64,000 nucleotides of DNA from Malacoraja senta (taxonomy: Eukaryota), in assembly GCA_038087875.1 (NCBI GenBank), contig CM075985.1:25110001-25174000 (forward strand), written 5' to 3'. The notes below the pieces were generated by a model, which was not told the origin of the DNA, did no database searches, and worked only from the letters and a program-made list of their open reading frames with translations. Numbering within the stretch: position 1 is the first letter of the stretch; the number at the start of each line of letters is the position of its first letter. Below, in pieces: positions 48,001-64,000 of the stretch. Both the position numbers and the translations under genes were made by a program.

Positions 48001-51000
48001 GACTTCTGCGTTGGTGGTGGACAAGTTTGTCTGGCTGGGCCTCCATAAGTAGGTTGTGGCCTGGGCCAGGGCCTATATTCCCTGCCAGACGTCAAAGGTC
48101 CAGCGGCATGTGCGGGCACCACTGCAGGATTTCGTGGTTCCCCCCTGCCGTTTCCAGCACATTCATGTCGATTTGGTGGCTCCGCTGCCGACGTCTCGCG
48201 GTGCCACCCACCTGCTGACTGTCGTGGATCGCTTCACGAGGTGGCCAGAGGCAATTCCACTCGCTGAAACTTCCGCCGTGTTTTGCTCATTTTGGTGTGC
48301 CTGCGGACATCTCCACTGACCGGGGGGCTCAGTTTACTTTGGCTTTGTGGTTGGCTTTGGCACAGCTGTATGGGACGCAGTTGCATTACACCACTGCTTA
48401 TCACCCTCAGGCCAACGGGTTGGTGGAGCGCTTCCATCGGCATTTGAAGTCGGCGCTGAAGGCACGGTTCACAGGCCCGGACTGGGTCGACCAGTTGCCT
48501 TGGGTGTTGCTGGGTATTCGCACGGCCCCAAAGGCGGATTTGGACACGTCATCCGCTGAACTCGTGTACGGCTCCCCGCTGCGGGTACCCGGGGATTTCC
48601 TTCCTGCACCTCGCGGGCAGCAGGAGCCCACTTTGACTGTGTTGCCGAAACTCAGGGAGAACGTGGGTGGCCTGGCTCCCATCCCGACCTCTCGGCATGG
48701 GACGGCTCCGGTATATGTACCGCCGAATTTTAAGAGCTGTTTATTTGTGTTTCTCCGCAGGGACTCACACCGGACTCAGCTGCAGCGGACTTATGAAGGT
48801 CCTTTCCAGGTGTTGGGCCCCGGCATCAGGACTTTTCTTTTGGATGTCGGGAGGAGATCGTTTCGATCGCTCGCCTCAAGCCTGCCCACGAGGATATCGA
48901 TAGCCCGGTGCTGGTGGCTCAACCCCGGCGTAGCGGTCATCCGCTGGTCGTCCCAGTTGCACCTGCGACTTTAACGATTGCTGGCTCTGTCGGCCAGTTC
49001 CGCCTGTACCGCCGGTTGTGCCCCTCGTTTCCACTCGGTCCGGTCACCTCATTCAGCCTCCCACTTGGTTCCTTACCTCGGGTTCTAGGGGGGGGTCCTG
49101 TAGCGGCACCTAGTGGTGGCTTGAGGCAATGCAAACCCTCGCTATTGGTTGGCACCATCATGTGATCGCGGGTGAGTTTTCGCGGGCTTTTGGTTCCTCA
49201 GTTGATCGAGCTCCACCCGGGTAACAGGAGCTTTAATATATTTGGCTGACCCAGCACGCAGTTTTCCTATACTTCTTTTTGTTTGTAGTTTACAAACAAA
49301 GATTTGTTTTACTCAACCTGCTCATCTCGCCAAAATACTATCTCCATTTGCCACTAATCAGAAAGAGTAACTTGAACAAGACATGGTGGAGAGGATACCA
49401 AATGTAATGATTAAAGTGCATTCATCAAATACAACATAGCAAGGTTATAACAAGGAGCAAACCATCAGTTGCACCTCTTCATATAAAAGTATTCTGACAT
49501 AATAATAGATAACTGAAGAGATGCATAGAATACAGTGAACATGGTGTTGTAATCTGTGCATAGATTTCATCTGTTTTGTAAATGCAGAGTGCAACATTGA
49601 AACCAGCAAGGATTGATGCTGGAAGTTTTGCAGTTTGCGATACATTTCGAAAAGACTTGGAAGTGAATATAAATCGATTGATTAGTAAGTTTGCTGATGA
49701 CACCAATATTGGCGGAGTTCCGGAAGAGTCAGGATTTGCTGTTACAACTTTACAGAACTTTGGTTAGGCTGCATATGAAGTATTGCGTACAGTTTTGGTC
49801 TCCACATGCAGAAGGATTTGAAGGCATTGGAGAGTGTAAGGAACAGGTTGACGGAATGCTGCTTAATTGAGGATATTAGGTATTAGGTTAGACAAAATTG
49901 GATTGTTTTCTCGAGAATTTCAGAAGTTGAGGGGACACCTGATAGTTGTGTATGGAAATACATGAGGCATAAATAGGGTAGAGTGTTATTCCCAGGGTAG
50001 AAATGTCAAATGCGAGAGGGCATAGCTCTAATATGAGTGGGGAGAATGTAATGGAGATTACCGTATTAAGATTTTTAACTTTTTAAAAAATGAAAAGTGC
50101 TTCATGTTCGGCACAGATACTGTGGAATGAAGGGTCTGGTCCTGTGATGTACTGTTCTATTTGTCGATTTATAATATATCAGCCTAAGAGTACTACTTTT
50201 GCAAAAATTCCAACGTTGAATATTCTAAATAAGGATTGACATGTGCTTGCATTTCTAGTGAAACATGCATTTGAAGAAATACATTTGAACAAATACTTCA
50301 CTTACCAGACGTGGAACTGGGAGGAGGGTGATGTGCTGTTGATGTAGTTGTAACTGGGAAAACAAAAATAAAAATTCAGCCGCTACAGCTTTCTGATGTT
50401 GAGTACACTGATGATTGATAACCCCTTTAGAAACATAGAAACATAGAAAATAGGTGCAGGAGTAGGCCATTCGGCCCTTCGAGCCTGTACCACCGTTCAA
50501 TATGATCATGGCTGATCATCCAACTCAGTATCCTGTACCTAATGTAAACCTACTGTGAAACTTCTTATCTCAATCTGTAACAGGCAAACTCTGATCCAAA
50601 TCAATGCTCACTAGCTTCAAATTATGTGATATAGGGAAATATATTGTCCATTTGGATATTATTCAATGTATATGGGTTGATTAGTAAGTTTGCAGTTGTA
50701 ACTGGGAAAAGAAGAAGAAAAATTCAACTGCCGCAGCTTTGTGATGTGGAGTACATGGATGATTCATAACCCCCTAAGAGAACCCCCTAAGATTCATAAC
50801 CTCATTATCTCGATCTTAGCAGGCAAACTCTGATCCAAACCGACACTCCCTAGATATCAATAAAGTCATGTCTGGAAATGATCTGCTTTTGTATTACTCA
50901 TGTAGGTGTACTGAATGTGGAGAGAACAAAAAATGATAACGAGTAGTGAGTTCTTACTTTTTCCAAATCTTTAAAATAATGAAAATGGCAGTGTTGTATG

Positions 51001-54000
51001 AAATAGGCAGAGGAGAGGGATTAGCTGCTGTGTTGTTATACAACAGTGCCATGGTTTCAAATGCCAAATGTTCTAATGTGTTATCATTTGATAATTTGAT
51101 TGATCTGTCACCTCTTACCCGTTGTCGACTTTGTCGTGGATGCAGTTGTTGTTCCACTTGTTGTAGTTGTCACTGCTGGGGAACAAAGAAAAACATTGAA
51201 AACTGTTGCACACCTCCTTAACGTCCCACATCTCAGAACATGTTGAAGTCCTTAGTTGTTTCACAGATAAATCATAGAAAAAGTGAAAAAAATAATTATT
51301 ACAGTTACAATAGCTGGAGCTATAAATTCAAACTAATTTGTCTCACTGCTCTTATGAAACTGCATTTGGTTGGATGGGAGCCACTCGTGGATCTAATGGG
51401 AGAACTTTGCCTTTTCAAAAAATAATCAAAATCAGTAAGCTACAGTGTAAATTACAACACACCACTCCCGTAAAATTTCAACCCGAGTCTATTGGCCATA
51501 AAAATTGTTGATACATCTCTGAAATTTATATGTGCTTTTATTTTTAACCACACAAACTTTTTCCATTTCTGCTGAATAAATCCATCACTTACCAGTTGAT
51601 GAAGTGGAAATAGGTGTAGTTGTTGTTGTACTTTCTGTCACTGTTGTGAGAAAGAGAAAAACATTCAAAACTGAAGAATTTGTAATCAACAGTAACCAGT
51701 AGTGTTGATGGGGATGCATTGATTGCTTATTTTATACCTAAGCGTAAATAGGAAATTATTGGTTACTAATGCTAAATCCATTTCCTTTGATTGGAAAATT
51801 GAAAATGGAAGAATATTACCCAGCACAATACACAAAGGTGGCAATTTTTTAGATAAAATCTGTCAAAGATTCAAATAGAAAATGTCAGTTGTGTATTACC
51901 ATCCATGCAAGATCCAAGTATTAAATTACAATCAAATGCTGGTAATATTTTGTAGATAAGTTGATGAGTATTTTGAAATCAGATTCACACAACCATGCAT
52001 TTCTCAGTAACATCATCCAAAGGTTCTCTGGAACTTCAGCCGGTGAGGAGAGACTTGATAGAAGTACTGTATATAAAATTATGAGAGGCGTAGATAGAAT
52101 ACAAATTCAGAACTTTTTTCCCAGTGTGGAAATGTCCAACACAAGAAAGCATAGCTATATGGTGTGGGGGGAAGTGGGGGAAAAATAATTGAGATGTGCG
52201 GGGCAAGTTTTTCTTTTGCACAGAGGGTGGTGAGAGCCTGGAACACATTGCCAGCGGTGGTGGTGGAAAACTGAAAAAAATGTAGTTGATTGAAATCCAG
52301 CAGTGATGACTGAAACTCAAGACGGCTATATTTAAATGACATTCAGGTGTGATGAGCGTCAACTATTTGGTAATTAATGCACCAAAAGAAAAAAGAAAAA
52401 TGAACACATGCACAGTTAGAAAAGCAGCAGCAAATGTTTGTTTCAGACGCACTTTTTCAATTTATTAGACAAAGAACAAAGGGAAAGAATACAAACAAAC
52501 ACAATTAATCATCATCCATAAATGATTTTGTCAAACATTCTATGGAATAAAAAAATCTGTTGTGTTTCACAATCAACGCTCCTGAAAGTGGTGACATAGG
52601 TGGTGACGATAATATTTGGTATTCTTGCTTTCATAGGCTGAGGAATTGGATATGAGAGTTGGGACATTATGCAACATTTGGTTGGATGGTACGTGTGTAC
52701 AGTTCTGGTCACCACACTGTGGTAGTAATAAAGAGAATGCAGCAGAATTTACCCCAATGGTTGCTGGAATTGAGGGCTGTAATTCTAAGAAGAGATTGGA
52801 TATAGACTGGTTTTATTCTCAGTGGAATATAGGAGGCCAAGTGGGAACCTTATAAATATTCAAAAATATGTTAAGGGGTATTGTTAGTGGCTTTTATCCC
52901 TGGGCAGGAGAATCTAGAATTAGAGGCAACAGGTTTAAGGTGAGAGGGGAAAACATTATAGGAGATTTGTGGGGTAGATTTTTCACAGACGGTGGGGTGA
53001 TTATCTGGAACAAGCTGACAGAAGAAGTGGTAAAGGCAGATATACAATTACAATATTCAAAAAGCATCTGGAACGGGGTACTGGATGATCAGCCATGATC
53101 ATATTGGATGGCGGTGCAAATTTGAAGGGCCGAATGGCCTACTCCTGCATCTATTGTCTATTGTCTATTGAGTATGATATTCAGACATAAAATGGCAGCA
53201 TGGAAACATTGAATACTGTTTGAAATCAAAGTCCTGCTGGAGCTTCAACACATGAGGTGCTTGTCACCTCAGCAATATGATATCAAGTAAGATTTGTCTT
53301 AAAAATATGAGTTTGTGCATGTTCATAATTTTGAACGACAAATGGTACTTGCAGTACCCAAGTATCCAATTATCCCTGTTCTTGCCAAGTGATTACCGAT
53401 GTGCTGCCTTTTTTTAAACTAAATTTGACGCTATTATGTTATCGATTCTGCCCAATTTATTATTTGATTTTTAAACCATTTGTGCAATCTATTGTCTAAT
53501 CTGGTTTGCCTGAAACTATCTCATGGATCCAAGTTTGTAATATTGGGACTATCCCTTATGAGAGTTACAAATCCCTTCCCAACATTTTCCATTAAAATTC
53601 TCCTATCTCTCCTTCGCCGTCACTAAGCAGACAACCAAAAGAATTCATCCAGAATTGAACAGTATCAGCAGTCAATCCATAAACTATTCCCGTTGAATTG
53701 TAGAAGCAAGCCTAGGACTTTTTTTTATCATGAATACAGGAAATGGAGAAGATGTAATAACCTTGGGGTAGAAAATTGGAAAAATATAGCAGTGCCAATT
53801 CTATAAAATATCCCTGGTGTAGATGACACTAAGAAAATATGTGCTGAAGTCCCATGTCACATTTTCTTCTGTCGTAATCTAGGTTACAGCTATAATGATA
53901 TTAACCAGATTTTGCGGTAAAATAAATGTGGCACCTACAACTTCCTGTTACTATAGAATTAATTTGACAACATCATCAAATGTCTGCACATGCATTGTTT

Positions 54001-57000
54001 AGCTGTCCGTGTCTCAGAATTTTCTATAATCTTCTGGTGGGTTCACAATAATGAAATGATGAACATCTGTGATTATTTATTGAGAAGATGAATGAGAAAA
54101 CTTTTCCTTTGCTGCTGACATTAACACCATGGCCAATAATGGAAAAGAATATCTGTAAATCAAATTTTCCCTGATAGATATTTTCATGTAAAGCGAAAGG
54201 GGACGTGGTACTTACTTGTGAAAAAATTGCTTTAAACATGAAAACATTCAATGAAATGAAAATATTTAACCATCATATTTTCCATTTTTCCACCTGAATT
54301 TGATTACATTGAAGTCTGATAATCCTCAAAGTCCTAAGAATCCTTTTCATAAAGTCCTGCTTAACATAATATGTATTAAAAAACATCACTCACCATTTGC
54401 AGGTGTGGTGCATGAAACATCTGCAGAACAAGAAACAGAAACAATGCAAATATTTAAGTGAAAAGCATTTGCATACTTTATTTATGGCCACATAAGTGGG
54501 TTTCTTCACAATGTTCGTAATGTTTCTGCAGACGGCTGAGTTTCTCCAGCATTTTTGTCTACCTTCGATTTTTCTAGCAGTTTCTGCAGTTCTTTCTTAA
54601 ACAATGTAATGTTGAGGCTCTGTAAGGCGATGGTAAGGCCGCATTTGGAATATTGTGAGCAATTCTGGACACCATATCTGAGGAAGGATGTGCTGCCTCT
54701 GGAGAGGGTCCAGAGGAGAATTACAAGAATGATCCCATGAATAAGTAGGTTAACCTATGATGAGCATTTGTTGGCACTGGGCCTGTACTCTCTGGAGTTT
54801 AGACGAATGAGGGGGGACCTCATTGAAACATACAGAATAGTGAAAGGCTTGGATGGAGTGGATGTGGAGAGGATATTTCCATTAGTTGGAGAGCCTAGAA
54901 CTAGAGGTCATAGCCTCAGAATTAATCAACGTTCTTTTAGAAAGGAGATGAGGAGGAATTTCTTTGGTCAGAGGTGGTGAATCTGTGGAATTCTTTGCCA
55001 CAGAAGGCTGTAGATGCCAAGTCAGTGAATATTTTAGAGATAGATAGATTCTTGATTTGTACAGGTGTCAGACGTTATGGGGAGAAGGATGGAGAATGAG
55101 GTTAGGAGGGAGAGATAGATCAGCCATGATTGAATGGCAGAGTAGACTTGATGGGCCGAATGGCCTAATTCTACTCCTATTCCTTATGACCTTATGACTT
55201 TTCCTCATGAAACAATACGATTTTAAGTTTCAAAATTTGATTTGAAAATAAATTTAGCAGATTTTAATGATGGCGAAAATGACTATTCTTAAGGTCACCT
55301 TCATTGTGTGGGTCTGTAAAATAAAACTGCTTACCTCTACATTCAACCTTTCCGTTGACACACACGCTGCAAAAAATAGCAAAATACCTCAAGTCAGTGT
55401 CACAAAACCCCTCAGTATACACTACTCCCAGTCTAAATGCAATTACTAATGTTCATTAACAAGGACATACAAGTAATTTATGTACAAGTCAAGTCAATTA
55501 TATTTGCTACGTAATTGGATTAGAAAAATAGAAAATGCTTTTTATTGAACCCCTCCATTTAGCTACTTCAGACAGTGCCTTGAATTTCACATGAAGTACT
55601 CGGTATTGAACATTAGTTGCTTATCAGTGATATACCCCTGATGGATTTTGCAATGGTGATCTATGGTTGAAAGCCACATTCAGCAGTAGAGGCCAATAAC
55701 TCAGAGGCCTTATGGCTACTATCCAAGCTCACAGCTAGAAACAATCTCGAAAGCAATTTGGGCATTGAGCCACAGGATGCAGGCCTGATCTTAAAGTAAT
55801 ACTTCCCATCTGATTCACCAAGGAAAAGTAGACTGGTTGGAGAATTTAGGAAGTGGGATGGTGAAACATTGGAAAAAGTTACTATTAAAAAAATATGAGG
55901 TGCCTTAGTGAGATTTTTCTGGATAAATCCTCAGAGCATAAAGGGAGATAATGCAAGGAAGGAGGTTGTTGGAGTGATTGTTATTTTTTTGCTGGCTGTC
56001 AGTGTAAAATCTGTGGTATGGAAGTTATTATTGAAGATTTCAAGGAATGGGGTTAATCAGGGTTGAAAGGCAGGGAAGGGTAAAGGTCAATGTGTTAGGG
56101 AGATTCTGTCTGACTAATTTGAGTGATTTTTTTGCACAAGTGATTAAGTGTATTATTGAGTGCACTGCAATTGACAGACTTCATAGATATCTTTAAACCG
56201 TATAAGAAACACACAGGAGACTGATCCCAAACATAAGAGCTCATTGGTTATTTTGATCCAAACTGGAAGCAGAGAATGATGGTCAGAGCTGTTTTTGCAA
56301 TTGATGGGAGACCAATTTCAATTGATCTTAGACTACATGATAATATTGATGTTAATTAGACAGTTAGAATGACAGTGATGGAAGTTAATCATAGAGTCAT
56401 AGGTCATACAGCATGGAAACAGGCCATTTGGTCCAGCTTGCCCATACTAACCAAAGTGCCACATCTACACAAGTCCCACCTGCCCACATAGGACTCATAT
56501 CATTCTAAGCCTTTCCTAACCATGCAGACTGTCCAAATGTCTTTTAAATGTTGTTATAGTTTCTGTCTAAACCACTTCCTCTGGCAGTTCATTCCATATA
56601 CTCACCACCCTCTGTGTGGAAAACGTTGCCCCTCAGATTCCTACTAAATCGTTGCCCTGTCACCTTTACCTATATCATCTGGTTCTTGATTCCCCTACTC
56701 TGGGTAAACAACTCTGTGCATCTACCCTATCTATTCTCCTCATGATCCTAAACATCTCTAAAATATCACTCCTTATCCTCCTACACTCCAAAGAATCCAG
56801 TCCTAGCCTGCCTAACCTCTCCCTATAGGTCAGGCCCTCAATTCCCGGCAACATCCTCGTAAATTTTCTCTGCACTCTTTCCAGCTGAGCAACATCTTTC
56901 CTATAGGAGGGTGACCAAAACTGAACACAATACTCCAACTGTGGCCTCACCAGCACCTTTTACAGCTGTAACATAACATCCAACTTCTATACTCAATACC

Positions 57001-60000
57001 CTGACTGATGAAGGTCAATGTGCTAAAATACTTCTTGACCACCTTATCTACCTGTGACGCCACTTTCAAGGATCTATGTACCTGCATTCCTAGATCCCTC
57101 TGCTCTACCACACTCCCGAGAGACCTGCAACCCACTGAAGATCCATAGTTAGACTTCCAAAAATACAACATCTCGCCTTTACCTGCATTAAACACCATTA
57201 ACCATTCCCCTGCCCACTTATACAACTGATCAAGATCCTGCTGTAACCTTTGATAACCATCTTCACTATATATAATACCACCCACTTCAGTGTAATCTGC
57301 AAACTTACTAATCCAGACAAATATTAGGTGATGCACTTGAGAATAATAATAAGAGTAGAACATATATATAGAATGGTTGGGCCTGTTGAACAGAGTAAAT
57401 GAAGGGGCAGTTGAGGGGCAATGGACAACACCCCTGCATCATGCTTCCAGAGAGCAGTGTTCAATCCTGACCTTAGATGCTCCTAGTGAATGCTTGGGAT
57501 TCCTCCACATGCCAAGCCCTTGCTGGTTGGGAGAATGTTAAAGTACCCTTTGTGTAAATTGGTGGCAGGAAAATGGGCACAGTTGGGGGAGAGTTAATGA
57601 CAATAAAAGGAAAAACAACATTGAATTAGTGGAAATGAATTTTTGATGGTCTGTGTAATCACAATATGCTGAAGGGCCCATTTCCCTGCTGTATGATAAT
57701 AACTCTACCTTGTGGATCAAAAACAACAATTAGTACAGTCTTCTGAGGACAACATGGCCCACCTTAGCACATATGTCTTATCCTGTCAGCTACTTTTATT
57801 ATTTATTGTGCATGTTTATATCTTTAGTTGTTTTTCTTTTCTGACTCCTAAGTCTCCTGTTTGACAGTTTAATATTAAGCAGCAGAACATGAGATCTGTG
57901 ACATTTTTTAGGCTTCAAAGCATCATCACAATCAATATTGCACCACTAACCCGTAGCCTCCACGGGAGGTGTGGTCCACCAACTCAACCCGTTGCCGAAC
58001 GTAAGATTGCAGCACTCCCCTGCCTCCCCCAGCACTGGGCTTTAAAAAAAAAATTCCAATTGCACTTCCCCAATTGCAATACCAATTGACCCTTCCCCTC
58101 CTGTCCTGCCAGGATCTATGATGGCAACATTGTTGCAAATGTCGGGTGGAGTGCTGTGATATCCCATTCAGGTGAAACATTGGTGGAAGCACAGAGTGTT
58201 CATGTATTGCAAATTTGTATCAATTTGTTGGAAGCTAGCAGGAATGATTTTAACAGTAAAAATCTTGTTAAAGTTGGCTTTTTTAAACCTTGAAATATCA
58301 ATAACGTGAAATATAGCAGCAAATCTTAAGTGAAACTGATTACGACATGGAGGGGGGAAATGTGCGTCAGAATATGTAAAAATTTCAGCGCTAGCATTTT
58401 GAGGAAGATACAAACATACATACAACACACACACATACATGATGAGACTTTTATAGGTATATAGATATCAGGTAGAAATTGGGAAACATTAAAATATTTG
58501 TGATGGATACATTACCATTCTTTACAGTCACAATATATTTTTTCGCCTGGCTGCAATATTTCTTCATGGTAGTAACATGTGCAATTTGGTAAGTTGACAC
58601 ACTCTAATATATTTTCATCCAAATAGGGAGCACTTACTGGGCATTTTGCATAACAACCTATATACAAGAATAAAAAGCATTGTGTGATGATGAGATTTTT
58701 AGAATTGCACACAGACACATTTTTTTTAAAGTTATTTGTTACAGTTGGGTTTACATTAATATTCTCAACCTTATTCCTGATTCATAAATGTTCCATTCTT
58801 GATTAGTTCCACAAAGTGAAAAGCATATTAAAATTGCAAATTAATTAAAAACCAAGCAAATCTCTTTAGTTTAGTTTAGTTTAGACAGTGCTGAAACTAT
58901 CCTACACACTGGGGATAATTTACAATTTTAACCAAAGCCAATTAACTTACAAATCTGTTTAACGTACAAATTCTGTACAGTCAGCAGCTGTAGTCAGGAT
59001 CGAACCCGGTTCTCTGGTGCTGTGAGGAAGCAACTCTACTGGTTTGCCACTGTGCCTGCCCCAAATAGGACCAGAATTTCCAGCCACTGTTGAACTGCTA
59101 GAGTTTACCAAAGCCATTGTGGTAAATTCACACTTACTGTCAATATCAACTGACTGCAAAGTGACAAGTTCTTTAGCAGATCCCCCAGCATGGATAATAT
59201 TTGCCGTTTTGTATCCAATCACTGCTGAAGAGCTACATCAGCTCTTTCAATGATTTGGATGAGAACATACATCGCAAGACTAACAAGTTTGCAGATGATG
59301 CAAAAGTGGGTGGTTGAGCAGATAGTGATGGTGGTTGTAAAAAATTCCAGCAGGATCTTGATCAATTGGCCAAGTAGGCTGAGGAATGGTTGATGGAATT
59401 TTATGCAGTAAAATGTGAGGTGTTGTATTTTGGGAAGTCTAACATAGGCAGGACCAACACAGTGAATGGTAGGACTCTGGTTAGTGTTGTAAAGCAGAGG
59501 GATCTAGGAGTGCAGCTGCATAGTTCCCTGAAGATGGAGTTGCAGGTGGATCAGGTGGTCAAAAAGGCTTTTGGCACATTGGCCTTCATCAGCCAGTATT
59601 GAGTATAGAAGTTGGGAGGTCATGTTGCCATTGTATATGATGTTGCTGAAGTGACATTTTGAATATTGTGTTCATTTCTGGGCATCGTGTTTTAGGAATG
59701 ATGTTGTCAAGCTGGAAAGGGTAAAGAAAAGATTTACAAAGATGTTGCCAGGACTAGAAGGTCGGAGCTATAAGCAGCAGTTGAGTAGGCTGTGACTCTA
59801 TTCCTTCGAGCGGAGGAGGATGAGGGATGATCATATAGAGGTGTATAAGATCATGGGAGGAATAGATCAGCTCGATACACAGATTATCTTGCCCAGGTGA
59901 ATCGAGGACCAGAGAACATAGGTATAAGATGAAGAGGAAAAGATTTAATAAGAATCTGAGAGGTAAATTTTTCACACAAAGGGTGGTGCATGTATGGAAC

Positions 60001-61313
60001 TAGCTGTCAGAAGAGGTCGTTGAAGCAGGGACTATCCCAATATTTAAGAAAAAGACAGGTACATGGATAGGACAGGTTTGGACCAAATGCTGGCAGGTGG
60101 GACTAGTGTTGCTGGGACATGTTGACCGGTGTGGGCAAGTTGGGCCAAAGGACTCTAAGAGCAACTAGCATTTTTGGACCTTTACATATTTCAGGCATAA
60201 AACTGCATGAATCCATAACCTCTTGACAATTACGTGGATTATTGCTAACAATTCAATTTGTAATTGTGAGCACATCCTTGCAAAATCTACTTCTTTATTT
60301 TTTGTTGTGTATGCGGCTTATTATTTCCTATTCACAAATGCTCTTGAGAAGGGAGCAGTAAATCACCATCATCAGAAAGTGGAGATACACCAAATCACCC
60401 ATCTGCCAATTACCCCTCCTTACCCGTATCCACCTATCACTTGCAAGATATTGCCTGACCCCTGCAGTTCTTTACTAGCTTTTGCCTCTCTACACCATCA
60501 GTTTGTAGAAGGGTCCCGACCCTCATAGTCTGACCATTTCTCTCCACAGATGCTGCATGATCCACAGTTCATTGAGCACATTTGTTTTTTTGGTCAAGAT
60601 TCCAGCCTCTGCAAATTCTTGTGTCTCTAAACTAGGTGAACATGTTCCTGGTGGGAAAATACTTTCCTTCTAATTGAGAATGCATTGTGGATTGCATTTT
60701 CCAGGTGTTTTGTAACAGAACAAACCTGAGCAATTTTTCACGTAGTGGAAACAAACTATGCAGTCTGGATTGCAGACCTCTGAAGGAATCCTAGCTGTAT
60801 CATTGATTCATCATTGATTCATCACTTTTGAATGAATGTGGTTGTAAAAGCTTCAGCTTTGTCCATAGCATCACATTCTGGGTTTAAAAGTGATAATTCA
60901 TTGTACATTAGATGTAAACTTTTTTTACGTTTCTATCAAGGTATCAAATTGTGCCATAATATAGTATTATATATATATATATATATATATATAGTTGTGT
61001 ATATATATATATATACATACATACACACACTGTAGGTAGACACAAAATGCTGGAGTAACCCGAAACGTCACCCATTCCTTCTCTCCAGAGATACTGCCCG
61101 TCCCGTTGAGTTACTCCAGCATTTTGTGTCTACCTTCGATTTAACCAGTATCTGCAGTTCTTTCCTATATATAGGTATGGATTTAACCTTCAAGTATTGC
61201 AGAGAACTTTTTCCCAATGTAATGATCCGAGCATGTTCTTGTTGTTAATGTTCCACAAGGGTGATAGTGCCAGCTGTATTCTTCAGGTTTGTTATAATAG
61301 TCACAATATACAG
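1..61313 (-). CDS. MUC19: Gel-forming mucin gene, MUC19-like (partial, multi-exon; D3 C-terminus plus micro-exon-encoded PTS domain; continues beyond both window ends)
   Basis: Phase-compatible GT-AG exons splice into PVYCDYYN...WHYHPCG...[18 protein letters not shown]...CVC...EC, matching my recollection of MUC19 TIL3/E3, followed by ~70 Thr/Ser/Pro micro-exons. Orthology is from recall, not a search. Confidence 0.8.
404..457 (-). CDS. Exon A, 54 nt: (A)[17 protein letters not shown]
   Basis: ctttcccttgttctccag acceptor (NAGNAG), G|gtgagt donor. Confidence 0.85.
820..1310 (+). mobile_element. Old, internally deleted CR1 LINE relic in the B-A intron of every unit (first copy shown; diverged copy ~49670-50160)
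   Basis: agtaagtttgcagatgacaccaag (SKFADDTK), ttggttaggccacatttgaagtattgcgtgcagttttggtct (LVRPHL-YCVQFWS), agagggcacagctttaagg (RGHSFK). Confidence 0.85.
1458..1505 (-). CDS. Exon B, 48 nt: (V)[15 protein letters not shown]
   Basis: cttttgttttcccag acceptor, G|gtaagt donor. Confidence 0.85.
1884..1925 (-). CDS. Exon C, 42 nt: (G)[13 protein letters not shown]
   Basis: First AG (caacag) after pyrimidine tract; G|gtaagt donor; acceptor atypical. Confidence 0.68.
2316..2369 (-). CDS. Exon A (TSFTS variant)
   Basis: Copy of exon A, splice sites intact. Confidence 0.85.
3361..3408 (-). CDS. Exon B (THHPPP variant)
   Basis: Copy of exon B, splice sites intact. Confidence 0.85.
3784..3825 (-). 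CDS. Exon C
   Basis: Copy of exon C. Confidence 0.68.
4097..4638 (+). mobile_element. Young 5'-truncated CR1 LINE (ORF2 C-terminus plus 3' UTR)
   Basis: Open 144-aa ORF ESVQRR-TRLIPG...[20 protein letters not shown]...LWNSL; ttctatgt-type tail; absent from other units. Confidence 0.95.
4817..4870 (-). CDS. Exon A (EPSTT variant, acceptor ttcgtcag)
   Basis: Copy of exon A. Confidence 0.83.
5599..5640 (-). CDS. Exon C
   Basis: Copy of exon C. Confidence 0.68.
6032..6085 (-). CDS. Exon A
   Basis: Copy of exon A. Confidence 0.85.
7086..7133 (-). CDS. Exon B
   Basis: Copy of exon B. Confidence 0.85.
7512..7553 (-). CDS. Exon C
   Basis: Copy of exon C. Confidence 0.68.
7944..7997 (-). CDS. 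Exon A (chimeric EPSTT + TSFTS variant)
   Basis: Copy of exon A. Confidence 0.83.
8726..8767 (-). CDS. Exon C
   Basis: Copy of exon C. Confidence 0.68.
9159..9212 (-). CDS. Exon A
   Basis: Copy of exon A. Confidence 0.85.
10214..10261 (-). CDS. Exon B
   Basis: Copy of exon B. Confidence 0.85.
10640..10681 (-). CDS. Exon C
   Basis: Copy of exon C. Confidence 0.68.
11074..11127 (-). CDS. Exon A
   Basis: Copy of exon A. Confidence 0.85.
12127..12174 (-). CDS. Exon B
   Basis: Copy of exon B. Confidence 0.85.
12553..12594 (-). CDS. Exon C
   Basis: Copy of exon C. Confidence 0.68.
12985..13038 (-). CDS. Exon A (TSFTS variant)
   Basis: Copy of exon A. Confidence 0.85.
14033..14080 (-). CDS. 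Exon B (THHPPP variant)
   Basis: Copy of exon B. Confidence 0.85.
14456..14497 (-). CDS. Exon C
   Basis: Copy of exon C. Confidence 0.68.
14889..14942 (-). CDS. Exon A (PTTSS variant)
   Basis: Copy of exon A. Confidence 0.85.
15671..15712 (-). CDS. Exon C
   Basis: Copy of exon C. Confidence 0.68.
16104..16157 (-). CDS. Exon A
   Basis: Copy of exon A. Confidence 0.85.
17158..17205 (-). CDS. Exon B
   Basis: Copy of exon B. Confidence 0.85.
17584..17625 (-). CDS. Exon C
   Basis: Copy of exon C. Confidence 0.68.
18016..18069 (-). CDS. Exon A (chimeric EPSTT + TSFTS variant)
   Basis: Copy of exon A. Confidence 0.83.
18798..18839 (-). CDS. Exon C
   Basis: Copy of exon C. Confidence 0.68.
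19231..19284 (-). CDS. Exon A
   Basis: Copy of exon A. Confidence 0.85.
20286..20333 (-). CDS. Exon B
   Basis: Copy of exon B. Confidence 0.85.
20712..20753 (-). CDS. Exon C
   Basis: Copy of exon C. Confidence 0.68.
21145..21198 (-). CDS. Exon A (TSFTS variant)
   Basis: Copy of exon A. Confidence 0.85.
22196..22243 (-). CDS. Exon B (THHPPP variant)
   Basis: Copy of exon B. Confidence 0.85.
22610..22651 (-). CDS. Exon C
   Basis: Copy of exon C. Confidence 0.68.
23043..23096 (-). CDS. Exon A
   Basis: Copy of exon A; upstream intron shortened by deletion. Confidence 0.8.
23530..23577 (-). CDS. Exon B
   Basis: Copy of exon B. Confidence 0.85.
23956..23997 (-). CDS. Exon C
   Basis: Copy of exon C. 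Confidence 0.68.
24390..24443 (-). CDS. Exon A
   Basis: Copy of exon A. Confidence 0.85.
25443..25490 (-). CDS. Exon B
   Basis: Copy of exon B; peptide [17 protein letters not shown] is visible in ORF 25435..25620. Confidence 0.85.
25867..25908 (-). CDS. Exon C (GITT variant)
   Basis: Copy of exon C. Confidence 0.68.
26180..26721 (+). mobile_element. Duplicate of the CR1 insertion at 4097
   Basis: Same junctions, offset 22,083 bp, about 7 substitutions by eye. Confidence 0.95.
26900..26953 (-). CDS. Exon A
   Basis: Copy of exon A. Confidence 0.85.
27953..28000 (-). CDS. Exon B (THHPPP variant)
   Basis: Copy of exon B. Confidence 0.85.
28376..28417 (-). CDS. Exon C (TTMTP variant)
   Basis: Copy of exon C. 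Confidence 0.68.
28809..28862 (-). CDS. Exon A
   Basis: Copy of exon A. Confidence 0.85.
29859..29906 (-). CDS. Exon B (THHPPP variant)
   Basis: Copy of exon B. Confidence 0.85.
30282..30323 (-). CDS. Exon C
   Basis: Copy of exon C. Confidence 0.68.
30715..30768 (-). CDS. Exon A (PTTSS variant)
   Basis: Copy of exon A. Confidence 0.85.
31768..31815 (-). CDS. Exon B (weakened donor gtaaat)
   Basis: Copy of exon B; +5 G>A in donor. Confidence 0.7.
32194..32235 (-). CDS. Exon C
   Basis: Copy of exon C. Confidence 0.68.
32442..32455 (-). pseudogene. Truncated exon A (acceptor kept, donor deleted)
   Basis: Only tgtagttggctctg remains; ~240 bp deletion with templated insert; read-through hits TGA. 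Confidence 0.75.
33453..33500 (-). CDS. Exon B (PPPNSTS variant)
   Basis: Copy of exon B. Confidence 0.85.
33869..33910 (-). CDS. Exon C
   Basis: Copy of exon C. Confidence 0.68.
34302..34355 (-). CDS. Exon A
   Basis: Copy of exon A. Confidence 0.83.
35354..35401 (-). CDS. Exon B (THHPPP variant)
   Basis: Copy of exon B. Confidence 0.85.
35777..35818 (-). CDS. Exon C
   Basis: Copy of exon C. Confidence 0.68.
36211..36264 (-). CDS. Exon A
   Basis: Copy of exon A. Confidence 0.85.
37264..37311 (-). CDS. Exon B
   Basis: Copy of exon B. Confidence 0.85.
37690..37731 (-). CDS. Exon C
   Basis: Copy of exon C. Confidence 0.68.
37938..37951 (-). pseudogene. Truncated exon A (second copy of the same lesion)
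   Basis: Identical junction to 32442, offset 5,496 bp. Confidence 0.75.
38948..38995 (-). CDS. Exon B (THHPPP variant)
   Basis: Copy of exon B. Confidence 0.85.
39374..39415 (-). CDS. Exon C
   Basis: Copy of exon C. Confidence 0.68.
39806..39859 (-). CDS. Exon A
   Basis: Copy of exon A. Confidence 0.83.
40860..40907 (-). CDS. Exon B
   Basis: Copy of exon B. Confidence 0.85.
41286..41327 (-). CDS. Exon C
   Basis: Copy of exon C. Confidence 0.68.
41717..41770 (-). CDS. Exon A
   Basis: Copy of exon A. Confidence 0.85.
42766..42813 (-). CDS. Exon B (THHPPP variant)
   Basis: Copy of exon B. Confidence 0.85.
43191..43232 (-). CDS. Exon C
   Basis: Copy of exon C. Confidence 0.68.
43624..43677 (-). 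CDS. Exon A ([10 protein letters not shown] variant)
   Basis: Copy of exon A. Confidence 0.85.
44664..44711 (-). CDS. Exon B
   Basis: Copy of exon B. Confidence 0.83.
44939..44992 (-). CDS. Exon A, boundary copy: (A)[17 protein letters not shown]
   Basis: ttatccag acceptor, G|gtgagt donor; Gypsy inserted 38 nt upstream. Confidence 0.78.
45031..45232 (+). repeat. 5' LTR (202 bp, TG...CA)
   Basis: tgtagcggcacctagtgg...ctagccaca; direct repeat of 49099-49334. Confidence 0.93.
45234..45244 (+). promoter_or_regulatory. Primer-binding site, tRNA-Trp type
   Basis: tggtgaccccg, 1 nt after the LTR; matches the first 11 nt of the tRNA-Trp PBS TGGTGACCCCGACGTGAT. Confidence 0.8.
45310..48960 (+). 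pseudogene. Gypsy gag-pol, disrupted
   Basis: Gag [17 protein letters not shown]; protease FLVDFGA; [27 protein letters not shown], YxDD destroyed (stop-LDN); RNase H VDASD; integrase [34 protein letters not shown]. Confidence 0.93.
49087..49095 (+). promoter_or_regulatory. Polypurine tract
   Basis: agggggggg 3 nt before the 3' LTR. Confidence 0.8.
49099..49334 (+). repeat. 3' LTR (236 bp; terminal CA mutated to AA)
   Basis: Direct repeat of the 5' LTR plus 34 bp. Confidence 0.93.
50306..50353 (-). CDS. Diverged B-type PTS micro-exon, 48 nt: (V)[15 protein letters not shown]
   Basis: ttttcccag acceptor, G|gtaagt donor. Confidence 0.82.
50428..50540 (-). mobile_element. CR1 3'-end fragment
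   Basis: agaaacatagaaacatagaaaataggtgcaggagtaggccattcggccc is the reverse complement of the CR1 tail seen at 4580-4638. Confidence 0.85.
50691..50701 (-). pseudogene. Remnant of a B-type exon (acceptor kept, donor deleted)
   Basis: tgcagttgtaa|ctgggaaaa fused to CR1 sequence gattagtaagtttgcag through shared tgcag. Confidence 0.6.
51119..51175 (-). CDS. Diverged A-like PTS micro-exon, 57 nt: (A)[18 protein letters not shown]
   Basis: tttctttgttccccag acceptor, G|gtaaga donor. Confidence 0.82.
51593..51640 (-). CDS. Diverged C-like PTS micro-exon, 48 nt: (V)[15 protein letters not shown]
   Basis: ttttctctttctcacaacag acceptor, G|gtaagt donor. Confidence 0.82.
52040..52270 (+). mobile_element. 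Degenerate CR1 fragment
   Basis: [10 protein letters not shown]...cagagggtggtgagagcctggaacacattgcca. Confidence 0.75.
52590..53170 (+). mobile_element. Degenerate CR1 fragment with 3' tail
   Basis: [26 protein letters not shown]; gaagggccgaatggcctactcctg + (ctattgt)n. Confidence 0.8.
54394..54420 (-). CDS. Mucin micro-exon, 27 nt, phase 1-1: (D)VSCTTPAN
   Basis: Acceptor tttcttgttctgcag, donor G|gtgagt; phase-compatible. Confidence 0.8.
54602..55200 (+). mobile_element. CR1 3' fragment
   Basis: [39 protein letters not shown]; ccttatga tail. Confidence 0.92.
55335..55366 (-). CDS. Mucin exon, 32 nt, phase 2-1: (C)[10 protein letters not shown] (end of E3)
   Basis: Acceptor ctattttttgcag, donor AG|gtaagc; completes the TG+C Cys codon and the CxC...C motif. 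Confidence 0.9.
55900..56300 (+). mobile_element. Highly degenerate CR1 RT fragment
   Basis: ttctgtctgactaatttgagtgatttt resembles SCLTNL-EFF; boundaries approximate. Confidence 0.45.
56390..57320 (-). mobile_element. CR1 3' fragment
   Basis: [40 protein letters not shown]. Confidence 0.92.
57416..57695 (+). mobile_element. Degenerate tRNA-derived SINE (HE1-like) with CR1-type tail
   Basis: B-box-like gtgttcaatcctgacc; tail gctgaagggcccatttccctgctgtat. Confidence 0.5.
58516..58657 (-). CDS. Mucin exon, 142 nt, phase 1-2: (G)[46 protein letters not shown](C) (TIL3/E3)
   Basis: Acceptor ttcttgtatatag, donor TG|gtaatg; lies within ORF 58512..58718. Confidence 0.93.
58865..59061 (-). mobile_element. 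tRNA-derived SINE (HE1-like), internally deleted
   Basis: Minus strand ggcacagtggc...gtagagttgc...gggttcgatcctgac (A/B boxes); (taaac)n tail. Confidence 0.75.
59240..60155 (+). mobile_element. CR1 3' fragment
   Basis: [28 protein letters not shown]; tail ggtgggactagtg...gggcaagttgggc. Confidence 0.92.
60390..60630 (+). mobile_element. Penelope-like terminal-repeat fragment
   Basis: cagtttgtagaagggtcccgaccc...cacagatgctgc...caagattccagcctctgca; family assignment from recall. Confidence 0.5.
60968..61030. repeat. (AT)n/(AC)n microsatellite
   Basis: Direct reading. Confidence 0.9.
61034..61135. repeat. Perfect 26-bp inverted repeat with 50-nt spacer (Penelope-like terminal fragment)
   Basis: aggtagacacaaaatgctggagtaac (61034-61059) / gttactccagcattttgtgtctacct (61110-61135). 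Confidence 0.9.
61188..61313 (-). CDS. Mucin exon, 126 nt, phase 1-1: (P)[41 protein letters not shown] (start of TIL3)
   Basis: Acceptor cttattttgcag, donor GAAG|gttaaa, open frame, CDYYN/WHY-PCG mucin D3 motif. Confidence 0.92.
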
Positions 61314-61899
61314 CTGCAAAATAAGAGTTACAATTTTGTTTTTATAGATTTAGAAAAAAGTCTAATTGACATAGAGTTATGAACTCACCTTTTTGTACAA
61401 AAGATAGCTATCTATTTAAAAAAAAAAAAATCTTATTACAAATAATCTTTAATATCCATCCTAAATCTTGTTCTCTTTTCATTCTACTAATTGATGGTAC
61501 CGTGGGTATTTTGGTGCAGTGAATTCTAAATTCCCACTAGCTTTTTATTTTCTGGATTCATTTTACCAATCTATTTATATTTAAAAAAAACATTTCCCTT
61601 CATTCTGAACCCTCTCTTATGGAAAGGCTAATATCTAGTCCGTTCTGTTGGTGCGGTTCATTATTTTAACTCCTTGGTTATATAATCATAAACTGTACAC
61701 CCAGACAAGTTAAGTCACAGTTATCAGGTTTCTTGCTGATTCAACTCCTTTCTTCCAGGTAATTTCTTGATAAATTGTCCCTTGATTGTTTTTCCATGAC
61801 AGTATATCCTTTTTAAGGTGGCATTCATGCTAAACAAAATCCCTGTGGTACTCAAAGAAACTGAATCCAAATGATCCAAAAAAATTATGGTACATAGAT

Positions 61900-63121: not shown

Positions 63122-64000
63122 TAGTCATAGTCATAGAGTGATAGTGTGGAAACAGGCCCTTCAGCCCAACTTGCCCACACCGGCCAACATGTCCCAGCTA
63201 CACTAGTCCCACCTGCGTGTGCTTGATCCATATTCCTCCAAACCTGTCCTATCCATGTACCTGTCCAAGTGTTTCTTAAACATTGGGATGGTCCCAGCCT
63301 CAACTACCTCCTCTGGCAGCTTGTTCCATACACGCACCACCCTTGGTGTGAAAAAGTTACCCCTCAGATTCCTATTAATGTTTTTCCCCTTCACCTTGAA
63401 CCAATGTCCTCTGGTCCTCGATTCCCCTACTCTGGGCAAGAGATTCTGTGCATCTACCCGATCTATTCCTCTCATGATTTTATATACCTCTATAAGATCA
63501 CGCCTCATCCTCCTGCTCTCCAAGGAATAGAGACCCAGCCAACTCAACCTCTCCCTATAGCTCAGACCCTCTAGTCCTGGCAACATCTTCAGAAATCTTC
63601 TCTGAACCCTTTCAAGCTTGACAATATCTTTCCTATAACATGGTGCCCAGAACTGAACACAATATTCTTAATGCGGTCTCAGCAACATGGCCTCCCAACT
63701 ACTATACTCTATACTCTGACTGATGGCCAATGTGCCAAAAGCCTTTTTGACCATCTTATCTACCTGCGACTCGACCTTCAAGGATCCATTTGCCTGCACT
63801 CCTAGATCCCTCTGCTCAACAACACTCCCCAGAGGCCTCCCATTCACTGTGTAGGTCCTGCCCGTGTTAGATGTCCAAAAATGCAACACCTCACATTTCT
63901 TGGTATTAAATTCCATCAACCATTCCTCAGCCCACCTGGTCAATCGATCAAGATCCTGCTGCAATCATTCACAGCCATCTTCACTATCTGCAAAACCACC
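63122..64000 (-). mobile_element. CR1 3' fragment (runs off window)
   Basis: [23 protein letters not shown]; LGLYSLE-RRMR-DLIEVYK; VWNKLPEEVVEAG; (gactat)n tail. Confidence 0.93.

What the first reader, a model, noticed from the sequence alone, without database searches (positions are those of the whole stretch)
61276..61278. Interchain cysteine of the D3 assembly replaced by Tyr
Seen: the exon reads [14 protein letters not shown] (codon TAC). Known: homologues have Cys here (MUC2 CDYYNPPHE-C-EWHY, Cys1130; VWF E-C-EWRY, Cys1142), one of two cysteines forming the D3-D3 intermolecular disulfides that polymerise mucins and VWF. Inference: a single TGC>TAC change removes this bond, so the mucin may polymerise weakly, differently, or not via its N-terminus.
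Basis: partly seen in the sequence, partly recalled or inferred. Interest (0 to 1): 0.75.

Follow-up and report, generated by a model that had tools for sequence, protein, structure and literature searches.

The report
Skate mucin lost its linking cysteine
A skate mucus-protein gene of the MUC19 family has swapped the one cysteine expected to link its heads into long chains for a tyrosine; the change is real, and database sequences show the same loss at least nine times in other vertebrates, so this family's head-to-head linking looks dispensable.

Summary
A minus-strand exon (61313-61188) encodes the start of TIL3 of a gel-forming-mucin D3 assembly. Codon 61278-61276 is TAC (Tyr) where MUC2, MUC5AC and MUC5B have the interchain Cys (MUC2 Cys1130).

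It is probably not an assembly slip. A contig from a public run of the same species reads the same, though it may come from the same animal. The collinear Leucoraja erinacea ortholog and two other related species read TGC. A fourth species reads TCC (Ser).

The gene is MUC19-type, not MUC2-type. That family already lacks the second interchain Cys (MUC2 Cys1088), as the Leucoraja ortholog and all 161 MUC19-type sequences surveyed show. If this species' unread upstream exon is the same, the protein has neither structurally defined D3-D3 disulfide.

The loss is not unique. 15 of 161 MUC19-type D3 sequences lack this Cys (Y, F, W, N, R), from at least 9 independent events, including sheep, alpaca, sloth, a mole-rat, sharks, frogs and bichirs. 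No paper found in four literature searches reports this.

Exon 1 is otherwise strongly conserved, and the other cysteines and interface residues are kept. I read it as a working mucin that no longer cross-links at this site.

Expression, fixation in the species and the biochemical effect are untested. A lineage-specific extra Cys in E3 could be a substitute link. Interest is moderate.

The parts
61276..61278 (-). Codon TAC (Tyr) at the position of the TIL3 interchain Cys (MUC2 Cys1130 / VWF Cys1142)
   Evidence: Orthologs read TGC in Leucoraja and in organisms C and D, and TCC in organism B.
61188..61313 (-). Exon encoding the first half of TIL3 of the D3 assembly (126 nt, phase 1 at both ends)
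   Evidence: AG/GT splice sites. PDB phmmer hits MUC2, MUC5AC and MUC5B D3. 124/126 nt are identical to the Leucoraja ortholog, against about 91% identity in the flanking introns.
58516..58657 (-). Exon encoding the second half of TIL3 and the start of E3 (GCYAKCP...CDCKEC)
   Evidence: It differs from Leucoraja at 12 of 142 nt, and every Cys is kept.
58530..58532 (-). Extra Cys codon (TGT) two residues before the first conserved E3 Cys. It is present only in this skate ortholog pair (2 of 128 D3 rows).
   Evidence: Leucoraja has it too.
55335..55366 (-). Short exon finishing E3 (C)[10 protein letters not shown]
   Evidence: AG/GT splice sites. Collinear with Leucoraja L001 27802-27833.
288..45025 (-). 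Downstream PTS (sugar-carrying) region of the same gene, encoded by micro-exons inside about 26 tandem genomic units of about 1.2-2.5 kb
   Evidence: Self-BLAST. Thr/Ser-rich reading frames. Earlier scan finding s1-193204.
50301..51731 (-). First Thr/Ser-rich micro-exons after E3 (e.g. [41 protein letters not shown])

Best explanation
The window holds part of a MUC19-type gel-forming mucin gene of a skate. The collinear sequence is about 91% identical to Leucoraja erinacea.

Shown. A germline G>A transition changed the TIL3 interchain cysteine codon TGC to TAC. Related skates keep TGC, and one has TCC. The rest of the exon, the other cysteines and the polar and aromatic residues of the MUC2-type D3:D3 interface are conserved.

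Inferred. MUC19-type D3 assemblies already lack the second interchain cysteine (MUC2 Cys1088). So this protein can no longer form either of the two known head-to-head D3-D3 disulfides.

By analogy with MUC2, the heads could still pair or pack non-covalently in the acidic, calcium-rich secretory pathway. In MUC2 the Cys1088Ala/Cys1130Ala double mutant is monomeric on non-reducing gels yet still forms filaments at low pH. The secreted product would then be at most a tail-to-tail dimer rather than a covalent polymer.

The paralogue seems to have been released from the need to polymerise. In skates it sits on a roughly two-fold longer branch than its shark orthologs. In Leucoraja its D3 has also lost four other conserved cysteines, including the first Cys of the D3 CGLCG motif together with the Cys that I recall from memory as its partner in VWF. 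Other MUC19-type paralogues with the Cys intact exist in the same genome.
For: Codon and alignment.

Reality of the base and polarity of the change:
- The same-species contig is identical. Organisms C and D read TGC, and organism B reads TCC.
- The Leucoraja locus L001 is collinear with window 61359-52138 at 87-92% identity and reads TGC.

MUC19-type identity:
- The best hits are mucin-19 or mucin-19-like proteins.
- The D3 tree puts the window fragment inside the MUC19-type clade (support 92) with mammalian MUC19.
- The ortholog's C8-3 motif CACDLEGKYMGFC lacks the Cys pair, as Javitt 2019 states for human MUC19.

Constraint:
- Across the orthologous contigs of four skates, exon 1 shows 3 changes in 126 nt. 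The intron beside it shows about 15 changes in about 164 alignable nt. This is my hand count, and the Poisson P of about 0.003 was also worked out by hand.
- Two of the 3 exon changes hit the same base of the Cys codon.
- Exons 2-3 keep all 10 Cys and have no stop despite 17 substitutions in 174 nt (simulated P = 0.03).
- Interface residues equivalent to MUC2 D1122, Y1123, N1125, W1132 and H1133 are kept, and R1166 is K.

Recurrence:
- 15 of 161 MUC19-type D3 sequences lack this Cys, against 2 of 65 MUC2/5/6-type sequences.
- Parsimony gives at least 9 changes on the tree.
- This Cys column is lost in 13 of 128 rows, against 0-2 rows for most structural Cys columns.

Biochemical precedent: MUC2 mutants, VWF single replacements, and VWF p.Cys1142Phe found in VWD type 2A(IIE).

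A paralogue contig in the same run reads ...DDNECSWHY (loose end).
Against: - No RNA evidence for this gene in this species.
- The supporting same-species contig may come from the individual that was assembled, so a private or heterozygous variant is not excluded.
- The upstream C8-3 and VWD3 exons of this species lie outside the window. Absence of the Cys1088-equivalent is inferred from the Leucoraja ortholog and from family-wide invariance.
- pN/pS between the window and Leucoraja over the three exons is 0.88 (15 nonsynonymous to 4 synonymous changes). That is compatible with neutrality.
- No structure or biochemistry exists for any MUC19-type D3, so 'the only interchain Cys' is an extrapolation from MUC2 and VWF. 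In MUC19-type D3 the MUC2 Cys1082-equivalent has also lost its MUC2 partner (Cys1090), and its pairing is unknown.
- The extra E3 Cys (58530-58532) could form a new intermolecular bond.
Confidence: 0.6

Rival explanations
1. Decaying paralogue. The gene is a recently inactivated or dispensable MUC19-type copy drifting neutrally, and the Cys loss is one symptom of decay rather than a functional state.
For: - pN/pS is 0.88 over 297 nt against Leucoraja, and exons 2-3 differ at 9.8%, about the intron rate.
- The skate orthologs sit on a long branch (0.31-0.38 against 0.13-0.20 for the shark orthologs).
- The Leucoraja ortholog has lost four other conserved D3 cysteines.
- NCBI's Leucoraja model is a truncated 310-aa product that skips the VWD3 exons.
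- No protein model of the window's own species was found.
Against: - There is no stop or frameshift in the three exons here or in the 15 N-terminal exon matches in Leucoraja.
- All splice sites are intact.
- Exon 1 evolves far more slowly than its introns across four skates.
- All other cysteines of exons 1-3 are kept (simulated P = 0.03 for exons 2-3).
- Two of the Leucoraja cysteine losses are the two halves of a disulfide I recall from memory for VWF (Cys889-Cys1031). That would look like coordinated remodelling, not random decay.
Confidence: 0.15
2. Relocated cross-link. The mucin still polymerises covalently head to head, but through another cysteine, most plausibly the lineage-specific extra Cys at the start of E3 (58530-58532). 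That Cys arose before the Tyr change and made the TIL3 Cys redundant.
For: - The extra Cys is present in both the window and Leucoraja and in no other of 126 D3 rows.
- With the Leucoraja-type upstream exons, the D3 region of the window protein would have an odd number of cysteines (33), which leaves one unpaired.
- After the extra Cys appeared, the TIL3 Cys was replaced twice in related skates, to Tyr and to Ser.
Against: - Counting cysteines is weak evidence, because domain borders are arbitrary and the pairing in MUC19-type D3 is unknown.
- The new Cys might pair inside the chain with a cysteine orphaned by the other losses.
- The position of this residue relative to the two-fold axis could not be measured with the tools at hand.
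- Whether organisms B, C and D carry the extra Cys was not checked.
Confidence: 0.15
3. Artefact or rare allele. The A at 61277 (minus-strand codon TAC) is a sequencing or assembly error, or a private heterozygous variant of the sequenced animal.
For: Only one same-species run could be shown to hold the exon. It may be the assembly's own source, and Logan contigs drop minor alleles.
Against: - The contig has k-mer depth 17.7 and no difference over 358 nt.
- A related species independently lacks the Cys at the same base (TCC).
- The site is demonstrably labile across the family.
Confidence: 0.08

Closest known systems
MUC19 (mammalian mucin-19; porcine submaxillary mucin is its pig counterpart by my recollection)
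   Same: - D3 sequence type: CDYYN..ECSWHY..CG in TIL3.
- The C8-3 motif C-x-C-D-x-E-G-K-Y-x-G-F-C lacks the MUC2 Cys1088 and Cys1090 equivalents. This was seen in the Leucoraja ortholog.
- The window fragment falls in the same D3 clade (support 92).
- The sugar-carrying region is encoded by many small exons.
   Different: - Tyr replaces the conserved TIL3 Cys.
- There is an extra Cys at the start of E3.
- The ortholog's D3 has lost four further cysteines.
- The shark ortholog (Cetorhinus XP_078391219.1) carries a CysD and a D4 assembly at its C-terminal end. A 2024 review (PMC11207715) says human MUC19 lacks D4.
[quoted passage not shown]
MUC2 D3 assembly (PDB 6rbf, 7a5o) and its Cys1088Ala/Cys1130Ala mutants
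   Same: - Best solved-structure match.
- Same TIL3 insertion carrying the interchain position.
- Interface residues equivalent to D1122, Y1123, N1125, W1132 and H1133 are conserved.
- The natural protein resembles the engineered double mutant in lacking both interchain cysteines.
   Different: - It is a natural variant, not an engineered one.
- Tyr, not Ala, sits at the position.
- It belongs to a different mucin family.
- MUC2 His1128 is Glu here and Arg1166 is Lys.
Other natural MUC19-type proteins without this Cys
   Same: Members: Ovis aries, Vicugna pacos and Fukomys damarensis (Phe); Choloepus didactylus, Pelobates, Erpetoichthys and Oryzias latipes (Tyr); Cetorhinus and Chiloscyllium (Trp).

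The same column is replaced, mostly by an aromatic residue, and the surrounding motif is kept.
   Different: - These are independent events in other lineages and, in sharks, in another paralogue.
- The mammalian cases lose only this one Cys (36 of 37 conserved D3 cysteines kept), whereas the skate ortholog group has a wider remodelling.
- These are database gene models that I did not check against reads.
VWF Cys1142 variants (p.Cys1142Phe in von Willebrand disease type 2A(IIE))
   Same: The same homologous position is replaced by an aromatic residue. The known effect is a defect in multimer assembly.
   Different: VWF keeps a second interchain Cys (Cys1097), so replacing one alone does not abolish D'D3 dimers (PMC8847404). 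VWF is a blood protein, not a mucin.
Stickleback spiggin C1/C2 (MUC19-derived glue proteins)
   Same: They are lineage-specific MUC19 duplicates that have lost multimerisation motifs (truncated GLCG) and are thought to be secreted unpolymerised (PMC4989455).
   Different: Spiggins are short proteins without a long sugar-carrying region. The skate gene keeps a very large PTS array.

Membership tests
Gel-forming mucin / VWF D3 assembly | TIL3 module with the D3-specific insertion C-D-Y-Y-N-x4-(C)-x-W-H-Y-x-P-C-G | tested here: met
   Ungapped phmmer alignment to MUC2, MUC5AC and MUC5B D3 chains. 53 library representatives share the motif.
Gel-forming mucin / VWF D3 assembly | Interchain Cys in TIL3 (MUC2 Cys1130 / VWF Cys1142) | tested here: not met
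   The codon is TAC = Tyr. It is Cys in 209 of 226 surveyed D3 sequences.
Gel-forming mucin / VWF D3 assembly | Second interchain Cys in C8-3 (MUC2 Cys1088 / VWF Cys1097) | not testable with these tools
   The exon lies beyond the window end. It is absent in the collinear Leucoraja ortholog (CACDLEGKYMGFC) and in all MUC19-type sequences surveyed.
Gel-forming mucin / VWF D3 assembly | E3 module cysteines after TIL3 | tested here: met
   C-x2-C-x-C-x5-C is present across exons 2-3, plus one extra Cys.
Gel-forming mucin | Long Pro/Thr/Ser-rich region downstream of D3 | tested here: met
   Thr/Ser-rich micro-exons from 51.7 kb down to the 45-kb tandem array. Earlier finding s1-193204.
MUC19-type mucins | D3 groups with mammalian MUC19 rather than with MUC2/MUC5/MUC6 | tested here: met
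   FastTree of 128 D3 rows. The MUC19-type clade has support 92 and includes the window fragment. The nearest relatives are shark 'mucin-19-like' and similar genes. The window contributes only 99 residues.
MUC19-type mucins | C8-3 motif without the Cys1088/Cys1090 pair (E-G-K-Y in place of G-G-D-C-x-C) | not testable with these tools
   Outside the window. Met in the Leucoraja ortholog. Javitt 2019 describes the same for human MUC19.
MUC19-type mucins | C-terminal cystine-knot dimerisation domain | not testable with these tools
   The 3' end of the gene lies beyond window position 1. The shark ortholog model shows CysD, VWD and C8 near its end, and that model may be cut.

The most novel reading that the evidence does not exclude
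MUC19-type mucins use the TIL3 position as an evolutionary switch. The single remaining D3 interchain cysteine has been replaced repeatedly (at least 9-10 times in vertebrates), preferentially by Tyr, Phe or Trp. Placed on the two-fold axis of the D3 dimer, these residues would stack against their symmetry mates. That would turn a permanent disulfide link into a reversible, non-covalent one and so retune mucus from a covalent polymer to a dissociable assembly. In the skate ortholog group the covalent link may instead have moved to a newly gained Cys in E3.
Probability: 0.2. Interest if true: 0.65.

Novelty: new variant of a known kind. Interest (0 to 1): 0.45.

Why it matters
Head-to-head disulfide linking of D3 assemblies is the textbook step that turns mucin dimers into polymers and gives mucus its gel properties. 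A natural, apparently intact mucin lacking both structurally defined D3 cysteines is a ready-made test of whether MUC19-type mucins need that step at all.

The survey also found the same loss in sheep, alpaca, sloth, a mole-rat, sharks, frogs and bichirs. If those losses are real in the proteins, MUC19 polymerisation is evolutionarily optional. Species-to-species differences in saliva, tear or skin mucus rheology could then trace to one residue.

This is directly testable with recombinant D3 fragments. It is also a caution against transferring the MUC2/VWF assembly model to MUC19 without checking.

Tried and rejected
- Tandem Repeats Finder found nothing because the array units are longer than its 500-nt limit. 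Self-BLAST showed the array instead.
- First PDB query: my coordinates were out of frame. Corrected.
- Own-species protein model, wanted to read the upstream C8-3 exon: two database searches found none. One covered the 1314-4180 aa length class with Mobula D3, the other the 170-542 aa class with the Leucoraja fragment. The third search was not spent.
- Earlier scan notes gave nothing on the exons just beyond the window end.
- RNA evidence could not be obtained.
- Cysteine parity as proof of an unpaired Cys: considered and kept only as a weak hint, because MUC19-type pairing is unknown and the MUC2 Cys1082-equivalent has lost its MUC2 partner.
- MUC2 orthology, implied by automatic names such as 'mucin-2-like', 'mucin-5AC-like' and 'mucin-6-like': rejected on the C8-3 motif and the tree.
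- The apparent stop after 'CKEW' in exon 2: rejected as a break. It is the GTAATG donor, and the next exon completes the Cys codon.
- My first regular expression for the survey matched nothing. It was replaced by BLAST-based column extraction.
- One interface column (MUC2 F1120) was mis-indexed and is not used.

Full report
**What is there.** The finding sits on the minus strand. An exon runs from 61313 to 61188 (126 nt), bounded by TTTTGCAG and GTTAAA. It encodes [41 protein letters not shown]. Codon 61278-61276 is TAC.

phmmer against all PDB chains aligns the exon without gaps to the D3 assemblies of MUC2 (6rbf, 7a5o; IFCDYYNPPHECEWHYEPCG, E about 2e-6), MUC5AC and MUC5B. The Tyr lies on their Cys.

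Two further exons follow:
- 58657-58516 encodes GCYAKCP...CDCKEC.
- 55366-55335 encodes (C)[10 protein letters not shown].

Both have canonical splice sites and complete TIL3 and E3. An apparent stop after 'KEW' is simply the GTAATG donor. Downstream come Thr/Ser-rich micro-exons and, from about 45 kb to the window start, a tandem array of about 26 genomic units carrying more of them.

**Is the position really the interchain cysteine?** Javitt et al. 2019 (PMC6739602) and 2020 (PMC7599080) show that MUC2 D3 dimers are held by Cys1088-Cys1088' in C8-3 and Cys1130-Cys1130' in TIL3. They equate Cys1130 with VWF Cys1142. Counting along the motif, the window's D, Y, N, W and H correspond to MUC2 D1122, Y1123, N1125, W1132 and H1133, and the Tyr corresponds to Cys1130.

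**Is the base real, and which way did it change?** I laid Logan contigs of four runs on 61140-61500.
- The run of the window's own species (organism A) gives a 1151-nt contig with no difference. It may come from the same animal, so it is not independent proof.
- The orthologous contigs of three related species each span the exon and both intron flanks, with 22-27 differences. At 61277 they read G in organism B and C in organisms C and D. On the coding strand that is TCC (Ser), TGC (Cys) and TGC (Cys).
- Short contigs from paralogous genes in organisms B and D read TGC.
- A loose end in organism A's own run reads ...DDNECSWHY. So the same genome has a paralogue with the Cys.

The library's best protein hit is Leucoraja erinacea XP_055509562.1. 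Its locus (L001) is collinear with window 61359-52138 at 87-92% identity, so it is the ortholog. It reads AAT CCT GAA GAA TGC where the window reads AAA CCT GAA GAA TAC.

**Which mucin is it?** Automatic names of the relatives vary: mucin-19-like, mucin-2-like, mucin-5AC-like, mucin-6-like. The sequences are all of one type. Upstream of the CDYYN motif they read C-A-C-D-L-E-G-K-Y-L-G-F-C. MUC2/MUC5 proteins read C-x-C-D-S-G-G-D-C-E-C-F-C there. So the MUC2 Cys1088 and Cys1090 equivalents are missing.

Javitt 2019 says exactly this of human MUC19. Named mammalian MUC19 proteins (rat, pika, horse, sheep and others) share the motif. In a FastTree of 128 D3 regions the MUC19-type rows form one clade (support 92) that contains the window fragment.

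Within that clade, the window and the Leucoraja ortholog group (support 99) with shark genes of Rhincodon, Cetorhinus, Carcharodon, Mustelus, Scyliorhinus and Pristiophorus, all of which have Cys.

The C8-3 exon of the window's own gene lies beyond position 64000. Its Leucoraja counterpart reads CACDLEGKYMGFC.

In this family the Tyr removes the only one of the two structurally defined D3-D3 disulfides that the family still has, not one of two.

**Is the gene alive?**

Evidence for function:
- No stops or frameshifts in the three exons, and intact splice sites.
- The Leucoraja locus holds uninterrupted matches to 15 N-terminal exons of the shark ortholog.
- Across the four skates' orthologous contigs, exon 1 shows three changes in 126 nt: Lys/Asn once, and the Cys codon twice at the same base. 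The alignable intron beside it shows about 15 changes in about 164 nt. This is my count, leaving out the poly-A stretch at 61414-61436. At the intron rate about 11.5 changes would be expected in the exon (Poisson P about 0.003, worked out by hand).
- Exons 2-3 differ from Leucoraja at 17 of 174 nt, about the intron rate. Yet they keep all 10 cysteines and have no stop. Only 3% of random substitution sets do that.
- The interface residues listed above are kept in the window and in the other Cys-less family members.

Evidence against function:
- Overall pN/pS against Leucoraja is 0.88 (15 nonsynonymous to 4 synonymous changes).
- The skate orthologs sit on a branch about twice as long as their shark counterparts.
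- The Leucoraja D3 has lost four other conserved cysteines: GNS-EY, QDK-Y, I-S-GLCG and SSS-Y.
- NCBI's Leucoraja model is a truncated 310-residue product.
- I found no protein model of the window's species and could obtain no RNA evidence.

Two of the Leucoraja losses are the VWF Cys889 and Cys1031 equivalents. I recall these from memory as a disulfide pair. Losing both together would look like remodelling rather than decay. I put a dead or dying copy at about 15%.

**The loss is recurrent.** I extracted the column from every D3 sequence fetched.
- Of 161 MUC19-type sequences, 146 have Cys and 15 do not: Tyr 5, Phe 4, Trp 3, Asn 2, Arg 1.
- Of 65 MUC2/5/6-type sequences, 63 have Cys and two (peafowl, tortoise) have His.

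The Cys-less MUC19-type proteins come from:

| Residue | Species |
|---|---|
| Trp | Cetorhinus; Chiloscyllium punctatum and C. plagiosum |
| Tyr | Pelobates cultripes and P. fuscus; Oryzias latipes; Erpetoichthys; Choloepus |
| Asn | Spea; Astyanax |
| Arg | Polypterus |
| Phe | Ovis; Vicugna; Fukomys; one unnamed sequence |

On the tree these form nine separate groups, each with a Cys-bearing sister. Parsimony needs at least 9 changes. Several losses are shared by two species, which argues against sequencing error.

Among the 37 conserved cysteine columns of the D3 region, this one is lost in 13 of 128 rows. Most are lost in 0-2 rows. The mammalian cases lose only this cysteine.

Replacement residues are mostly aromatic. 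From TGY, only 3 of the 7 non-stop single-base changes give an aromatic residue. With about ten events the excess is only suggestive (binomial P about 0.03-0.1 by my hand estimate, depending on how ambiguous events are counted).

Four full-text searches found no paper describing this. The closest are the MUC19 remark in Javitt 2019 and the spiggin paper (PMC4989455). The spiggin paper argues that some MUC19-derived stickleback glue proteins have lost their multimerisation motifs.

**What it most likely does.**

Shown: the substitution, its polarity, the family, the constraint on the rest of the exon, and the recurrence.

Inferred: the biochemical effect. Three published results bear on it.
- In MUC2, Cys1130Ala alone gives a monomer/dimer mixture. 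The double mutant is monomeric, yet it still forms filaments at low pH.
- In VWF, replacing Cys1097 or Cys1142 alone does not prevent D'D3 dimers (PMC8847404).
- VWF p.Cys1142Phe was found in patients with the multimer-assembly defect type 2A(IIE) (PMC9278302).

With no Cys1088-equivalent to fall back on, I expect this mucin's heads to pair at most non-covalently. I expect the secreted product to be a tail-linked dimer rather than a polymer.

**An alternative that I cannot exclude.** Both the window and Leucoraja have an extra Cys two residues before the first E3 Cys (58530-58532, TGT). No other of 126 rows has it. It predates the Tyr change and might carry a relocated intermolecular bond. It might instead pair with a cysteine orphaned by the other losses. 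Cysteine counting (33 in the region if the upstream exons are Leucoraja-like) hints at one unpaired Cys. This is weak evidence, because the pairing in MUC19-type D3 is unknown.

**Verdict.** It is a new variant of a known kind and of moderate interest. The family-wide pattern behind it is worth a specialist's look, and the bench tests for it are simple.

Noticed in passing
window 58530-58532 (minus strand): Extra cysteine codon (TGT) at the start of E3. It is shared with the Leucoraja ortholog and absent from the other 126 D3 sequences aligned, which have Asn or Asp there. It may be an unpaired or re-paired Cys.
   Followed up: partly
L001 15382-15519 and 17535-18554 (Leucoraja erinacea CM054028.1): The Leucoraja ortholog's D3 has lost four otherwise conserved cysteines: GNS-EY, QDK-Y, I-S-GLCG and SSS-Y. 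The first Cys of the D3 CGLCG motif is among them. So is the Cys I recall from memory as its partner in VWF (Cys889-Cys1031).
   Followed up: partly
L001 12574-17958: NCBI's model XP_055509562.1 (310 aa, 'mucin-19-like') skips four exons of TIL'/E' and VWD3. These exons are present and open in the locus, so the model is a truncated, partly mis-joined product.
   Followed up: partly
window 288-45025: About 26 tandem genomic units of roughly 1.2-2.5 kb, 93-99% alike, carrying Thr/Ser-rich micro-exons of the same gene on the minus strand. Already followed up by this scan as s1-193204.
   Followed up: partly
window 45227-49110 (plus strand): A retroelement lies between the PTS array and the first PTS micro-exons. 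Its open frames match DUF7041 (45353-45919) and the RNase H domain of reverse transcriptases (47296-47802).
   Followed up: partly
window 61034-61135: A fold-back element with perfect 26-nt inverted arms (AGGTAGACACAAAATGCTGGAGTAAC) 50 nt apart, just downstream of the exon in its intron. Matching contigs sum to k-mer depths of 10,000-67,000 in the runs of all four species, so it is a very abundant repeat.
   Followed up: partly
proteins P0224 (Pavo cristatus) and P0229 (Gopherus agassizii): Two MUC2/5/6-type D3 fragments (C8-3 motif CGCDSVGDCECFC) have His at the Cys1130-equivalent position (PPDKHEWFY) while keeping the Cys1088 pair.
   Followed up: no
protein P0023: A 494-aa 'VWD domain-containing protein, partial [Salmonella enterica]' on a 1485-nt contig carries the mammalian MUC19 D3 motif. 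It is almost certainly host contamination in a bacterial assembly.
   Followed up: no
window 56678-57438 and 63206-63964 (minus strand): Two related open frames with repeat-like sequence (…LQQDLD.L..WA.EWLM.FN..K…) lie in the introns. They gave no Pfam match. Part of the second is also present near the Leucoraja locus.
   Followed up: partly
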